Below are positions 57,455 to 61,599 of a DNA stretch of 64,000 nucleotides, in pieces. The position numbers were made by a program, and so were the translations under genes. This stretch comes from Schmidtea polychroa. Lineage: Eukaryota. The stretch is taken from assembly GCA_044892525.1 (NCBI GenBank), contig CM097886.1, forward strand, positions 114,948,001-115,012,000, written 5' to 3'. Each line of letters starts with the position of its first letter. Positions within the stretch are counted from its first letter, which is position 1. The notes beneath the pieces were generated by a model, which worked only from the letters and a program-made list of their open reading frames with translations, ran no database searches and was not told the origin of the DNA.

Positions 57455-59790
57455 CCTTTAACGGAAACGGTTCCAGCAGTCGGATGGACCAATAGGAGCA
57501 ATGATATTGGTTGAAATGCAACATAAGATTTGACATACGTCCTCCAGTTCTTTTAATCAGGGTTGACCTTATTTGAAACGGAGGCCTAACACGACAATAT
57601 AATTATAAAAGGGATTGTATACTGGTAAACCGGTTAACCGGTAAATTGGCACAAAAAAAACTCGGAAAATTTACCGGTAAAATCGGTACATTAAAAATCC
57701 TTGCTAGAAAGTTTTATGTGTAAAATATCGTATTTACCTAAATACCTACAGGATACAGTAAATATTTTAAATTCCCAGTTGGAAATTTGCTGTTTTATTA
57801 CATGTTTGAGCATGAAAGAAGAGGAAAAAAAGTTTCACTTCATTTGACATCTCAGCTTGTGACTACTTGAAAGAAAGATAAATACAAAAGGGATACTTTT
57901 ATTTATTACTCTCATCTGTTGCAGACGTGACTAAATCAATAGAATATAGCTAAGTTCCCATATACTAGCCCGCCAAATTATCTAAAAATGCAACCAATTG
58001 AAAGTTTAGAGTAAGATAATAAAAATATTGACACTTCTACAGTTAATGTAGAAATGACTATGAAGCAGAAATTATACGATCTCATAACATAAAAGACAGA
58101 ATGCCAGGAAAGATCAGTTTCACAACAAAAAAACAAATATATTGGCAATATATTGTGAAAAAAGAATTTGAGTACTTCCGCCAAGAGAAAATACAAGGAA
58201 AGTATATTCAAATGGTATATGATTATTTGATGACAATTCGTTCAACAAGTGTTGATTCAGAAAGGGTATTCTCGGACTCTGGGTTATTTTGTACAAAAAT
58301 AAAAACAAAATTAAAGAATAGCACTTTAAATAATTTAAGTTTTTTGAGGAGCTATTTTTTAAAAAATGTTAATAAATAAAAAACTATTAGTTAATAAAGC
58401 TATTTCTGTGTCATTATTATTTTTTTACTTTATTTTATTTGTTTCTAAAATATTATTATAGTTTGTTTAGATTTATAAAGATACATTAATCTTTATATTT
58501 TTCATATTTTATATTTTGGAAATAAAAATCGTGAAATGGACATTTAAACTTGTTTTTTTGTCAACTTTATTTTATCTTTTAGAAAACATAAATTTCCCGG
58601 TAATTTATCAGTAGACCGGTAATTTTATTTTCGGTAATCGGTAAATTTACAATCCATAATAATAATAATAATAAAGTTCTTCTTTTACATGTAATTTGTA
58701 TATTACAAGAGATTGTTCCAGCGCTTCAACGCCCAAAAAGATGTTTTCATAGAAATTTGAAACTTTTCTGACAAAAAAATGGTGAGTCACATTTTCAATT
58801 ATTCCTTGCTAGATCACATAAATGCTTTTCTAGGCCCAAGATTAATAAAAAGCCGTAAAAAATGTTCCCCAACTGGCAATTTTCTCATTGGCTGTTATTG
58901 ATGCGTTGTTCTTGCACGTAAACAGATAATAAAATACGGATCAAAGATGAAATTTGAACATTAACATTAAATAAAATACAATTGACCTTGACCGTAATTA
59001 AACTATCTCAGTTCCGGCTAATCACAGACATGAAAGGTGCAAAAGATGTCAAAGTTCCACACAAATCCTCAATTGTCACAAAGTGATGCCCAGAATTAGA
59101 ATTGTAGCGTCCAATTCCTGCAATGCTTCTTTAATCTATTTCTACAGCTGAATTCTATTAAATTTATTAATGAAATTGAATTTAATAATAAATTTGTCAG
59201 CTTTGAAGGTTTTGTTTTACTGATGGATTCAAGTATTGTTTATTGTCGGACGGAAATGACTCCAGCAGTCAGATGGACCAATAGGACCTATAATGCAGCA
59301 TAAGATTTGATATGCGTCCTTCAGATCTTTTTATCGGGGTTGACTTTAATTGAAACTGAGGCCTGACACAACATAATTAAGATAATATTAATAAAGATTG
59401 CTCCAGCTATTCAACACCCGAAAAGGTATTTTCATTGAAATTTAAAAAATTTGCTGTCAAATAAATGCTGAGAAGCATTTCCAATTATTCCTTGCTAGAT
59501 CACAGAAATGCTTTGTTAGGCCACAACCTAATAAAAAGCGGTAACAATTATCCGCAACTGGCAATTTCCTCATTGGCTGTTATTGATGCGCAGTTCTCAC
59601 CTTTGCTGCTATATACTAAATGATGTTGAACATATGTGAAAGGTGCCGAGTGAAATGAAACAAAATTGCATTAATTGCATTCACATTATTGAATAATTCC
59701 CCATCAAATGGTGGATAATTTAAATATTTGACAAATTCTCCTCATCTGGCACAATTTTCACTGCTTTCAAATTTATCCTCAATTTTCACT
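57455..59790 (-). pseudogene. Two tandem diverged copies of an LRR-like relic (copy A 57455-59090 split by a hAT; copy B 59240-59790)
   Basis: Clear DNA duplication (for example CCAGCAGTC.GATGGACCAATAGGA and CAATTATTCCTTGCTAGATCAC in both). LRR-like fragments ELRINN, LEKHLCDLARNN and FNENTFSGVE*LE appear only with frameshifts. Confidence 0.4.
57609..58658 (+). mobile_element. ZBED-type hAT deletion derivative
   Basis: Degenerate TAGGGATTGTA-type ends, ACCGGT subterminal repeats, and ORF 58101-58379 TIRSTSVDSERVFSDSGLFCTK (dimerisation domain); TSD not clean. Confidence 0.85.
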
Positions 59791-59871
59791 TTAAATATTA
59801 AATTTTTGTAAATGAAATAAATGAAAATTATCAAATAAATAAATCAATTTATTAATAAAAATATTATTCAA

Positions 59872-61317
59872 TCACGAGTCAAGGTCAACAGAGCATTTGA
59901 TAAATATTTCATTGTTACGCATCAGATCTGGATTGCTTGATAAATCCGCCAGGCGTATAAATTGGTGATATCCCATTCCATTATTTCTATCTGTTGGTTG
60001 CATATATTCTTTGATATTTGGATGATCTGCATATTTCACAGTCTTACTGACATGAGCCAGTCCGGTGCGCTGATTTATCAATGCGAGTGTGACAGAATGC
60101 CTGAATGGCCATTGCAAAATGCTGTCAAACTCGCCCTTCATCAAACAAAAGTACACAGATAAATGAGTGCCCTTGCCCTTGCCATCACCATCAGGATCCA
60201 CACGCAAACACATTTGATAACCATTTGCATGCGTAAGAAATGATTTGCTATAAATGCTGCGGTTGATTCCCTTTTTTGCATCTGCCATTTTATCAGAGAA
60301 TTTGTCGAGCTTCCATAAATATTCTCCGCATTGCTTATTGTTGCTCATTTGCTCAGCTTGATCAGCACATTTCCTCTGCAATTCAGCAATTTCCTCCTGA
60401 ATAATAATAAAAATCCAAATATCAATCACATTAATATTGCAATTCATTCACAAACTTGATTCCTTTCCATATTTCCCCTCATCGTAACATTTTCACCATT
60501 CAGCTGGTTAATTGTGGCGGATTTCTCATCATATTTCCTCTGCAATTCTGCACATTTCCTATGCAAATCAGCAATTTCCTCCTGAATAATAATAACAATC
60601 CAAATATCAATCATATCAATATTGCAATTCATTCACAAACTTGAGTCCTTTCCATATTTCCCCTCATCGCAACATTTTCACTCTGCAATTCAGCAATTTC
60701 CTCCTGAATTCTCACAAATTATCCGTATCAAATACAATATTGAATCTTACTCGCACAAATTCATTCTCTGCTGTCAATTTATTGTTATTTGCCTTCAATA
60801 TCTGCACCTCATTATTGAAATTTGTAACGAAATTCATCAATAGTTTTGTGTGCTCCATTATTTCCAATTGCAAATGATCCGCAACTTTATCCTGAGATAT
60901 ATTGCTTTTGTCACAGCCTATATTCGCATATGGACATGCAACTGATCGACATTTACACATCCGTGAATGATCTTCCATTTTTCTTAATTCATCAACGTAA
61001 TCACAAGAAATTCCTGAGCATTTCACTCTCATCTTTAATATTTTGATATTTATCGCGTAATCTACAGCAACATTTTCACTCAAATTCAGCATTTCCAGCT
61101 TACAGTCCTCTGTGTTACCGGGACAAGTTTTATTCTCTCTTTCTAGATATACTGAAATACAAGAGAAACAAAATCTGCATCCGCATGGAGCAATTCGAGC
61201 ATCGATCAATAATTTTTTACACATTGAGCATATCATTTCGTGCTGAATTTCTGCTAAACTTTCATAATTATGATTTCTTATTATTTGCCAAACATTTGAT
61301 AATTTCGAATCAGCCAT
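59872..61317 (-). CDS. TRAF: TNF receptor-associated factor (RING - short Zn finger - coiled coil - MATH), 426 aa, 4 exons
   Basis: Exons 60751-61317, 60641-60703, 60456-60581 and 59872-60396; phase-0 GT-AG introns of 47, 59 and 59 nt; RING CSMC..PCGCRFCFSC; MATH YLWKLDKF..GYQMCLRVDPDGDGKGKGTHLSVYFCLMKGEFDSILQWPF; no stops after splicing. Confidence 0.95.
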
Positions 61318-61599
61318 TTATCATATAAATTTAAATTATGAAAAATTAAAAAAATTAAATTAGTGAAACTTAAAATTTGAAAATGTCAATTATAATCAAT
61401 AATTTATATTATTCAAATTATATTATTTAAACAAAGGTTCATATATATTAATATGATAACATTTGTCTCCAAAAATAATATTAATATATATTTTAAAATA
61501 TAAAATAATATTTTAGTATAATTAAAAAATTATTTATGATGCTTAAAGAAATTTTATTTCAATCTTTAAAAATCTTTTTTTATTTGATAATTATTTTTT

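What the first reader, a model, noticed from the sequence alone, without database searches (positions are those of the whole stretch)
60390..60760. TRAF coiled coil built from tandem intron+exon cassettes in exact heptad multiples
Seen: introns 2 and 3 are both 59 nt and nearly identical (GTTTGTGAATGAATTGCAATATT..ATTATTATTCAG). Exons 2, 3 and 4 all begin GAG GAA ATT GCT GA. Exon 2 is 63 nt (21 aa, 3 heptads) and exon 3 is 126 nt (42 aa, 6 heptads), and all introns are phase 0. Known: the TRAF coiled coil drives trimerisation and partner binding and sets the RING-MATH distance. Inference: very recent unequal crossing-over is lengthening the coil while keeping register, and skipping either cassette would keep both frame and heptad phase. 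This could be a modular, tunable-length diversification system in an expanded TRAF family.
Basis: partly seen in the sequence, partly recalled or inferred. Interest (0 to 1): 0.7.

Follow-up and report, generated by a model that had tools for sequence, protein, structure and literature searches.

The report
TRAF stalk built from heptad-sized exons
A flatworm-type TRAF signalling gene builds its coiled-coil stalk from repeated exon-plus-intron units that are always whole multiples of seven amino acids, and about 20 sister genes carry 0 to 9 such units, so stalk length has changed repeatedly without breaking the coil, but there is no evidence yet that splicing varies it.

Summary
A minus-strand, four-exon TRAF gene (RING/zinc fingers, coiled coil, MATH) has phase-0 exons of 63 and 126 nt, each followed by a 59-nt intron. 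The two introns match at 56 of 59 positions, and exons 2-4 start with the same bases.

The pattern holds across the gene family. In 20 close paralogues on the same chromosome, all 37 internal coil exons are multiples of 21 nt (63, 105, 126, 147, 168). Cassette number runs from 0 to 9. The hydrophobic core sits at exon positions 3 and 6 of every heptad, and a trimer model of exon 3 uses exactly those residues.

"Very recent unequal crossing-over" is not supported for this gene. Its two repeat blocks differ more from each other (8 of 134) than from blocks in other genes (3-5). The 59-nt intron is about 98% identical family-wide, more conserved than the coding exons (about 90%). Truly recent duplications (99.5% identity) occur in a 9-cassette paralogue.

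Exon skipping could not be tested: only short contigs were available. They show canonical splicing in paralogues and no skipped junction.

The heptad rule has exceptions at the coil ends and in a distant subfamily.

Verdict: a real, neat, evolutionary modular architecture. Regulated tunability is unproven.

The parts
60751..61317 (-). Exon 1 (CDS from the ATG at 61317-61315). It encodes the RING finger, the TRAF-type zinc fingers and the first ~5 heptads of the coiled coil. It has the short-tail form, which lacks a 42-nt (2-heptad) tail present in most paralogues.
   Evidence: Translation is open over 189 aa. Pfam zf-C3HC4 scores 27.2 bits, above its cut-off, while zf-TRAF and Sina_ZnF are below theirs. 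The best solved relatives are TRAF6 RING-zinc-finger chains, E 3e-11 over residues 24-154. The 42-nt tail indel is shown.
60704..60750 (-). Intron 1: 47 nt, 'B-type' (gtaagattcaat...gagaattcag), phase 0.
   Evidence: The same intron type follows exon 1 and every B cassette in the paralogues, at about 89% mean identity.
60641..60703 (-). Exon 2: a 63-nt A-type cassette of 3 heptads (EEIAELQ SENVAMR GNMERTQ). It is the only 63-nt cassette in the family and looks like a 105-nt cassette with a 42-nt internal deletion.
60582..60640 (-). Intron 2: 59 nt, 'A-type' (gtttgtgaatgaattgcaat...ttattattcag), phase 0.
   Evidence: It is 98% identical to the family consensus.
60456..60581 (-). Exon 3: a 126-nt A-type cassette of 6 heptads. 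It contains a 21-nt tandem repeat (60533-60581) that encodes the extra heptad RKCAELQ.
   Evidence: A model of three copies gives a parallel, in-register trimer. The ipSAE is 0.72 against a best control of 0.04, pLDDT is 86, and the runs agree in at least 97% of contacts. Contacts fall at residues 3, 6, 10, 13, 17, 20, 24, 27, 31, 34 and 38.
60397..60455 (-). Intron 3: 59 nt, A-type, phase 0. It differs from intron 2 at 3 positions.
   Evidence: An RNA-like contig of run X2 (98 nt, of which 85 lie on 60455-60539) joins an exon-3-like end directly to GAGGAAATTGCTGA. This shows that this intron type is removed at exactly these borders. The contig carries paralogue-type bases.
59872..60396 (-). 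Exon 4: the last ~3 heptads of the coil (EEIAELQ RKCADQA EQMSNNK), then the MATH/TRAF-C domain, then the stop codon at 59874-59872.
   Evidence: Pfam MATH_2 E 1.8e-34 and TRAF-mep_MATH E 9.5e-33. The best solved relatives are TRAF5, TRAF3 and TRAF2 TRAF domains, E 1e-31 to 1e-27.
60362..60496 (-). Copy 1 of the 135-nt junction block: the end of exon 3, intron 3 and the start of exon 4.
   Evidence: repeat D1. The same block is conserved in 29 family copies.
60547..60681 (-). Copy 2 of the 135-nt junction block: the end of exon 2, intron 2 and the start of exon 3.
   Evidence: repeat D1, 94% identical to copy 1, spacing 185 nt.

Best explanation
This is an intact member of a lineage-specific, clustered TRAF subfamily in a planarian-type genome, probably Schmidtea mediterranea. 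Its TRAF-N coiled coil is encoded by self-contained exon-plus-intron cassettes.

There are two cassette kinds:
- A cassettes end ..GNMERNQ and are followed by a 59-nt intron. They are 63, 105 or 126 nt long.
- B cassettes end ..LDSERRR and are followed by a 46/47-nt intron. They are 126, 147 or 168 nt long.

Every cassette starts at the same heptad position, is phase 0-0, and is a whole number of heptads.

Cassettes have been gained and lost by unequal crossing-over between the near-identical junction blocks (exon end + intron + next exon start). Single heptads have been gained or lost by slippage on the 21-nt periodic DNA. Variants that break the heptad register inside the stalk are not seen, presumably because they are removed by selection.

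The result is a set of paralogues with similar RING and zinc-finger heads and fast-evolving MATH domains. Their trimeric stalks range from about 10 to about 62 heptads.

Shown: the gene structure, the heptad arithmetic and register, the family-wide variation, recent duplications in one paralogue, and canonical splicing of both intron types in paralogues.

Inferred: the recombination mechanism, selection for register, trimerisation in vivo, and any functional effect of stalk length. In the window gene the two cassettes are old relative to the family's background similarity, not recent.
For: - Gene model and domains.
- The 135-nt repeat with period 185.
- Family size: at least 22 close paralogues on C2 at 115-121.5 Mb.
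- Cassette lengths: 20 gene models hold 37 cassettes, 105 nt x17, 126 x11, 147 x5, 168 x3 and 63 x1. All are multiples of 21. All introns are GT..AG except in one pseudogene. Cassette counts run from 0 to 9.
- Independent length changes: at least 8, all multiples of 21 nt. They are two different +21 insertions in A cassettes, a -21 with a new acceptor site in L003, the -42 in window exon 2, +21 and -21 in B cassettes, the +/-42 exon-1 tail, and a 147-nt A cassette in a distant cluster.
- Heptad register: hydrophobic residues make up 78% of exon position 3 and 66% of position 6, and at most 16% of any other position.
- Trimer model of exon 3: ipSAE 0.72 against a best control of 0.04, pLDDT 86, at least 97% contact agreement between runs, with contacts exactly at positions 3 and 6 of each heptad and in register between chains. 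In the tool's calibration this mark was reached by 21 of 30 solved same-chain pairs and by 0 of 23 proteins solved as single chains.
- Recent events: units in L019 are 99.5% and 99.4% identical, and L006 has four 105-nt cassettes at 96-98%.
- Splicing: RNA-like contigs join B-type donors and A-type donors directly to GAGGAAATTGC.. at positions 60396, 60455/60456 and 60581.
- Context: the planarian TRAF/MATH expansion is published (PMC6109357; PMC7586133).
Against: - The heptad rule fails at the ends of the coil. The N-terminal coil of exon 4 has +4 aa (L016), +11 aa (L010) and a larger, non-heptad-multiple insertion (about 15-17 aa) in L023. Exon 1 of L006 lacks 4 aa.
- A more distant subfamily at C2:5.3 Mb has coil exons of 129 and 222 nt.
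- Many of the 37 cassettes descend from a few ancestral units, so they are not 37 independent tests.
- The 21-nt DNA periodicity alone would bias indels towards multiples of 21, so selection for register is not proven.
- Several paralogues are pseudogenes (L004, L009, L012, L013, L023).
- Expression of the window gene's own exon 2 is not shown. RNA-like runs X1 and X2 have no contig over 60610-60771.
- The organism name is inferred, not read from a record.
Confidence: 0.75

Rival explanations
1. Regulated tunable-length system. The cassettes would be alternatively spliced, so that one gene makes TRAF isoforms with stalks of different length. The ultra-conserved 59-nt intron and junction block would serve as the splicing control element.
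For: Every donor can be joined to every acceptor in frame and in register. The A intron and its exon flanks are about 98% identical across paralogues, while exons 1 and 4 are about 90% and the B intron about 89%. That would fit an RNA-level constraint.
Against: No skipped junction was seen. The only junctions recovered are canonical neighbour-to-neighbour ones, though short contigs make this a weak test. The intron has no fold signal, with z-scores of -0.16 and -1.13. About 250 nt of 3' flank is equally conserved, so high similarity is not special to the intron. A frameshifted paralogue (L023) keeps a perfect intron, while out-of-cluster copies (L021, L022) have decayed ones. That pattern fits homogenisation within the cluster better than constraint.
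Confidence: 0.12
2. Mutational bias only. The multiples of 21 would reflect nothing but replication slippage and unequal exchange on DNA that is already 21-nt periodic and flanked by identical junction blocks. Selection on heptad register would play no part, and stalk length would have no functional meaning.
For: TRF finds a 21-nt period in exon 3. The +21 insertions are tandem copies flanked by TTGCAGAGGAAAT motifs 21 nt apart. Whole-cassette changes automatically add multiples of 21. Pseudogenes also keep multiples of 21.
Against: The 42-nt deletions (window exon 2 and the exon-1 tail) and the L003 acceptor shift are not simple 21-nt slippage, yet they keep register. Introns of the same genes show 1-3-nt indels (46/47/48 and 57/59/62 nt). 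In contrast, 37 cassettes show no 3-, 6- or 9-nt indel. Non-heptad indels do occur, but only at the coil ends.
Confidence: 0.1
3. Assembly artefact. The second cassette in the window gene would be a false duplication made by the assembler in a repetitive family.
For: No read or contig spans the 185-nt repeat. The arrangement 63+126 occurs only once in the assembly.
Against: The two units differ in exon length (63 against 126 nt) and at 8 of 134 block positions. Both exons are open and in frame with good splice sites. DNA-like runs cover exon 2 and both introns at 95% identity or better. Other paralogues show the same kind of architecture independently.
Confidence: 0.03

Closest known systems
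TNF-receptor-associated factors (TRAF2/3/5/6), and the published TRAF/MATH expansion of Schmidtea mediterranea (PMC6109357; PMC7586133)
   Same: The domain order is the same: RING, TRAF zinc fingers, TRAF-N coiled coil, then TRAF-C/MATH. The best solved relatives are TRAF5, TRAF3 and TRAF2 for the MATH domain and TRAF6 for the RING-zinc-finger part. A trimeric parallel coil is modelled. The gene belongs to a large lineage-specific expansion.
   Different: The coil is encoded by repeated heptad-multiple exon cassettes whose number varies from 0 to 9 between paralogues, giving stalks up to about 62 heptads long. Neither of the two planarian TRAF papers read here mentions this. PMC7586133 contains no occurrence of exon, intron, tandem or splic-.
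Fibrillar collagen genes with 54-bp-unit exons (cited from my own knowledge, not checked here)
   Same: A long periodic rod is encoded by many phase-0 exons. Each is an exact multiple of the structural repeat and begins at the same repeat position. The classical explanation is amplification of an exon-plus-intron unit.
   Different: The repeat there is Gly-X-Y, with exons of 54, 108, 45 or 99 bp and a triple helix of a different kind. Exon number is essentially fixed within a gene family member. Here the unit is the 21-nt heptad of an alpha-helical coiled coil, and the number differs widely between young paralogues.
Length-variable coiled-coil stalks made by tandem repeats, such as streptococcal M proteins and the stalks of trimeric autotransporter adhesins (cited from my own knowledge)
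   Same: In-register gain and loss of heptad-compatible repeats changes stalk length while keeping the coiled coil.
   Different: Those are intron-less bacterial surface proteins. Here the repeat unit includes a spliceosomal intron and the protein is a cytoplasmic signalling adaptor.
Ig-MATH family with a TRAF-like coil in the same genome (earlier scan note s1-196446)
   Same: It is in the same genome and on the same chromosome arm region. It has a TRAF-like coil joined to a fast-evolving MATH domain. The MATH exon here has dN/dS of about 1.1.
   Different: That family carries Ig exons and no RING. Its coil exon structure was not examined here.

Membership tests
TRAF (TNF-receptor-associated factor) family | C-terminal TRAF-C / MATH domain | tested here: met
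   Pfam MATH_2 scores 119.3 bits (cut-off 32) and TRAF-mep_MATH 113.7 bits (cut-off 27.4). PDB TRAF5, TRAF3 and TRAF2 match at E 1e-31 to 1e-27.
TRAF (TNF-receptor-associated factor) family | N-terminal RING finger | tested here: met
   Pfam zf-C3HC4 scores 27.2 bits against a cut-off of 21.
TRAF (TNF-receptor-associated factor) family | TRAF-type zinc fingers between the RING and the coil | tested here: inconclusive
   Pfam zf-TRAF scores 20.9 bits and Sina_ZnF 24.3 bits, both below their cut-offs. However, the TRAF6 RING-plus-zinc-finger chain 5vo0 aligns over residues 24-154 at E 3e-11.
TRAF (TNF-receptor-associated factor) family | TRAF-N coiled coil directly before the MATH domain, forming a parallel trimer | tested here: met
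   The heptad pattern has hydrophobic residues at 78% and 66% of exon positions 3 and 6. The model of three copies of exon 3 has ipSAE 0.72 against a best control of 0.04, with in-register contacts. This is a model only, not a measurement.
Alternatively spliced cassette-exon system | mRNA isoforms that include or skip individual cassettes | tested here: inconclusive
   One reads call on four runs returned only short contigs and no joints. The loose ends show only canonical neighbour junctions, and they come from paralogues. The protein word search with exon 1 found nothing.
Alternatively spliced cassette-exon system | Cassettes are symmetric (same phase on both sides), so skipping keeps the reading frame | tested here: met
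   All 37 cassettes are phase 0-0 and multiples of 21 nt.
Recent tandem (unequal crossing-over) duplication within the window gene | The two copies are each other's closest relatives and more alike than copies in other genes | tested here: not met
   The two copies show 8 differences in 134 block columns, against 3-5 to the nearest blocks in other genes. They rank 16th and 21st of 27.

The most novel reading that the evidence does not exclude
The near-invariant junction block (42 nt of exon end, the 59-nt intron, and about 30 nt of the next exon) is a functional element and not just a leftover of duplication. It could be a splicing control module that lets multi-cassette TRAF genes produce stalks of several lengths. 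Alternatively it could be a favoured in-register recombination site that keeps generating stalk-length variants in an immune-type gene cluster. Either way, coil length would be a deliberately variable trait of an expanded innate-signalling family.
Probability: 0.12. Interest if true: 0.7.

Novelty: new variant of a known kind. Interest (0 to 1): 0.45.

Why it matters
TRAF adaptors work as trimers. Their coiled coil holds the receptor-binding MATH heads at a set distance from the RING/zinc-finger ligase part.

This family offers a natural series of otherwise similar TRAFs with stalks from about 10 to about 62 heptads, made by adding or removing ready-made exon units. It could be used to test how stalk length affects TRAF clustering and signalling.

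It is also a clean alpha-helical counterpart to the classical collagen exon rule, in which exon size equals a multiple of the structural repeat. It gives a concrete handle on how the large, poorly understood planarian TRAF expansion diversifies.

If splicing also varies cassette number, one gene could make several stalk lengths. That remains to be tested.

Tried and rejected
1. RNA junction test. One run search and one reads call were allowed. Only Logan contigs of 50-200 nt were returned. They gave no joints and no skipping evidence, and RNA-like runs had no contig over exon 2. The test is inconclusive, not negative.

2. Protein word search with exon 1, aimed at finding transcript-derived proteins that would show cassette use. 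It gave 15 candidates and none at E <= 1e-20. The length window of 104-330 aa excludes full-length relatives, so the blank says little.

3. Mirtron or structured-RNA reading of the conserved 59-nt intron. Fold z-scores were -0.16 and -1.13, and +0.57 with flanks. Rejected.

4. Dating the window duplication from intron identity. Rejected, because the intron is about 98% identical family-wide.

5. A generic GT..AG path search for gene models gave too many paths. A fuzzy-regex attempt and a per-pair MAFFT attempt both timed out. They were replaced by homology-guided intron mapping.

6. Other TRAF genes in the window: none at E < 1e-3.

7. A second, allelic or haplotig copy of the 63+126 arrangement: none in the assembly.

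8. Earlier scan notes near the place: none.

9. The joined (spliced) protein was never handed to any search, fold or complex tool. All such calls were made exon by exon, by reference. Full-length isoform structure predictions were therefore left out.

Full report
**What is there**

Reading the minus strand of 59800-61400 gives a compact four-exon gene.
- Exon 1 (61317-60751, 189 codons) has a RING finger. Pfam zf-C3HC4 scores 27.2 bits, above its cut-off.
- It also has TRAF-type zinc fingers. The Pfam matches are sub-threshold, but TRAF6 RING-zinc-finger chains are the best solved relatives, E 3e-11.
- Exon 4 (60396-59875, stop at 59874-59872) is a TRAF-C/MATH domain. Pfam gives E 1.8e-34, and PDB TRAF5, TRAF3 and TRAF2 match at E 1e-31 to 1e-27.
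- Between them lie exon 2 (63 nt, EEIAELQ SENVAMR GNMERTQ) and exon 3 (126 nt, six heptads).
- Intron 1 is 47 nt. Introns 2 and 3 are both 59 nt and differ at 3 positions.
- All introns are GT..AG and phase 0.
- The repeat finder gives a 135-nt direct repeat with period 185 and 94% identity. It consists of exon end + intron + next exon start.

**The genome and the family**

The window is C2:114,948,001-115,012,000 of a 781-Mb assembly with four very large contigs and about 28% G+C.
- These figures, and earlier scan notes about planarian "Burro" retroelements in the same genome, point to a planarian, probably Schmidtea mediterranea. This is an inference. I know the 2n=8, AT-rich, roughly 0.8-Gb genome from memory only.
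- A large TRAF/MATH expansion is published for that species (PMC6109357; PMC7586133).
- A six-frame search with exon 4 gave 150 scored matches out of 1472 candidates. At least 22 close paralogues (79-89% amino-acid identity) lie on C2 between 115.0 and 121.5 Mb, on both strands.
- The window itself holds no second TRAF.

**The cassette rule across the family**

I mapped both intron types by homology and read the exons between them in 20 paralogues. For the longest gene I first fetched more sequence. There are two cassette kinds.
- A cassettes end ..GENVAMR GNMERNQ and are followed by the 59-nt intron. They measure 63, 105 or 126 nt.
- B cassettes end ..NELK LDSERRR and are followed by the 46/47-nt intron. 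They measure 126, 147 or 168 nt.
- All 37 cassettes are multiples of 21 nt: 105 x17, 126 x11, 147 x5, 168 x3 and 63 x1.
- Every cassette is open.
- Every intron is GT..AG, apart from one pseudogene with GT..AA.
- Cassette number is 0 (L004), mostly 1-2, 3 (L005), 4 (L006) and 9 (L019 at C2:118.86 Mb, 364 aa or 52 heptads of cassettes, fully open).
- Most paralogues also carry a 42-nt (2-heptad) tail on exon 1. The window gene, L010 and L016 lack it.

I count at least eight independent length changes, all multiples of 21 nt:
- two different +21 insertions in A cassettes;
- one -21 with a shifted acceptor site in L003;
- the -42 that made window exon 2;
- +21 and -21 in B cassettes;
- the exon-1 tail;
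- a 147-nt A cassette in a distant cluster.

If in-frame lengths were free, the chance of this would be about (1/7)^8. That figure ignores mutational bias (see the rivals below).

**Register and oligomer**

I anchored heptads at the exon start. Hydrophobic residues then occupy position 3 in 78% and position 6 in 66% of heptads over 32 distinct cassettes, and at most 16% of any other position.

So every intron interrupts the coil at the same heptad position, and the end of exon 1 and the start of exon 4 fit the same register.

A complex model of three copies of exon 3 passed its controls.
- The ipSAE was 0.72 against a best control of 0.04.
- Partner pLDDT was 86 and the runs agreed in at least 97% of contacts.
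- In the tool's calibration the mark was reached by 21 of 30 solved same-chain pairs and by 0 of 23 proteins solved as single chains. The tool warns that this job, with three copies and a eukaryotic protein, is unlike its calibration.
- The contacts fall at residues 3, 6, 10, 13, 17, 20, 24, 27, 31, 34 and 38, with same-numbered residues touching.

That is a parallel, in-register trimer using exactly the predicted a and d positions. It is a model, and coiled coils resemble many solved structures, so it shows likeness and not binding.

**Is the window duplication recent?**

No evidence says so. Over the 134-column junction block, the window's two copies differ at 8 positions. The nearest blocks in other genes differ from them at 3-5. 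The sister copy ranks only 16th and 21st of 27, and the family mean is 5.4 differences.

The 59-nt intron has a mean pairwise identity of 97.8% across 15 paralogues and 98.3% across 29 copies. Exons 1 and 4 are about 90%, and the B intron is 88.6%. The genome holds 37 copies of the intron, all in this TRAF lineage. Intron near-identity is therefore a family property and cannot date the event.

Truly recent events exist elsewhere.
- In L019, units c2/c6 differ at 1 of 185 nt and c3/c8 at 1 of 164 nt.
- L006 has four 105-nt cassettes at 96-98% identity.

**An unexplained point**

The junction block and about 250 nt after the stop codon (97-99%) are more alike between paralogues than the coding exons are.
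- The MATH exon has dN/dS of about 1.1 with dS 0.10. Exon 1 has dN/dS 0.38.
- The intron shows no RNA fold signal.
- A frameshifted paralogue inside the cluster (L023) keeps a perfect consensus intron.
- Copies outside the cluster (L021 on C3, L022 at C2:27 Mb) have decayed introns.

This leans towards homogenisation by exchange within the cluster, but an RNA-level constraint is not excluded.

**Limits of the heptad rule**

The rule has exceptions.
- The coil segment at the start of exon 4 has +4 aa in L016, +11 aa in L010 and a larger, non-heptad-multiple insertion (about 15-17 aa) in L023.
- Exon 1 of L006 lacks 4 aa near the start of the coil.
- In the more distant C2:5.3-Mb subfamily the A-type cassette is 147 nt, but two other coil exons are 129 and 222 nt.

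The rule therefore holds for the repeated internal cassettes, not for every coil-coding piece.

**RNA and reads**

The single run search listed no run on record as RNA. Laying four runs gave only short contigs. The useful details are these.
- Run X2 has a 98-nt contig (85 nt of it on 60455-60539) that continues straight into TCAGCAATTTCCT on the plus strand. This is an A-type exon end spliced to GAGGAAATTGCTGA.
- Run X1 has contigs ending at 60396 and 60581 that continue into TCGCCTCCTC and TCGCCTCATC. These are B-type exon ends (..GAGGAGGCGA) spliced to cassette starts.

Both intron types are therefore removed at exactly the predicted borders. However, the contigs carry paralogue-type bases.

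- X1 also has exact contigs over 61238-61297 and 61300-61386 (5' end and leader), which suggests the window gene is transcribed.
- No RNA-like contig covers exon 2, and no joint (skipped or otherwise) was reported.
- DNA-like runs X6 and X8 cover exon 2 and both introns.

Cassette skipping and copy-number polymorphism remain untested.

The protein word search with exon 1 found nothing.

**Literature**

Searches for heptad, exon and coiled-coil terms and for planarian TRAF papers found the known TRAF expansion but no description of this cassette architecture.

The dedicated Smed-TRAF paper (PMC7586133) has no occurrence of exon, intron, tandem or splic-. Absence from this library is not proof of novelty.

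**Verdict**

The finding is real and extends well beyond the window. It is a clustered TRAF subfamily whose trimeric stalk is assembled from heptad-exact exon-plus-intron cassettes, with 0-9 cassettes per gene.

The most likely mechanism is ordinary unequal exchange between near-identical junction blocks, plus 21-nt slippage, filtered by the need to keep the coil in register (confidence 0.75).

The "very recent" claim for this gene is not supported. The "tunable by splicing" idea is open (about 0.12).

I rate it a new variant of a known kind (exon size tied to a structural repeat, in a known expanded family), of moderate interest.

Noticed in passing
window 59620-59870 (3' flank of the gene); the same stretch in L002-L020: About 250 nt right after the stop codon is 97-99% identical between paralogues whose coding exons are only about 90% identical. 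This suggests a conserved 3' UTR element or local homogenisation.
   Followed up: partly
L019 / L031 = G000:C2:118857297-118866000, minus strand: This TRAF paralogue has nine coil cassettes (105, 126, 105, 147, 126, 126, 126, 105 and 126 nt; 364 aa). All are open with GT..AG introns. Some units are 99.5% identical, so the duplications are recent.
   Followed up: yes
L015 and L017 = G000:C2:121336464-121336985 (+) and 121340021-121340542 (-): Two near-identical paralogues lie in opposite orientation, with their MATH-domain ends facing each other about 3 kb apart. Each has a single 168-nt B cassette.
   Followed up: no
L013 = G000:C2:119454018-119457539: This is a rearranged copy. Exon 1 runs into a piece resembling the start of the MATH exon (AAATTCTCTGATAAAATGCCAGC..) and then into a partial A cassette, with no B intron. 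It is probably a chimeric pseudogene.
   Followed up: no
L032 = G000:C1:199665500-199672000; L033 = G000:C2:117033500-117040500: These are truncated family fragments: exon 1, a B intron, a cassette, a perfect A intron, and then at most 30 codons of exon 4. One of them is on another chromosome.
   Followed up: partly
genome-wide, e.g. G000:C1:126548719-126549144 and about 40 similar places: Dozens of near-identical intron-less open frames of 478 aa are scattered over all chromosomes. Each carries a MATH domain about 35% identical to this gene's. Earlier scan notes ascribe such copies to giant Gypsy/'Burro' retroelements that carry TRAF genes.
   Followed up: no
L024-L028, L037 = G000:C2:5.28-5.37 Mb: This is a more distant TRAF subfamily (MATH 60-68% identical). 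It keeps a B-like intron and an A-like 59-nt intron (89-92% identical). It adds a different 50-nt intron and a further coil segment (KELIDKIDQMEKKHKIDL..) before the MATH domain. Its coil exons of 129 and 222 nt are not heptad multiples.
   Followed up: partly
exon 4 of the paralogues (alignment): The MATH exon alternates between conserved 30-nt windows (96-99%) and variable ones (81-83%), with an overall dN/dS of about 1.1. This is the pattern expected if binding surfaces are diversifying.
   Followed up: partly
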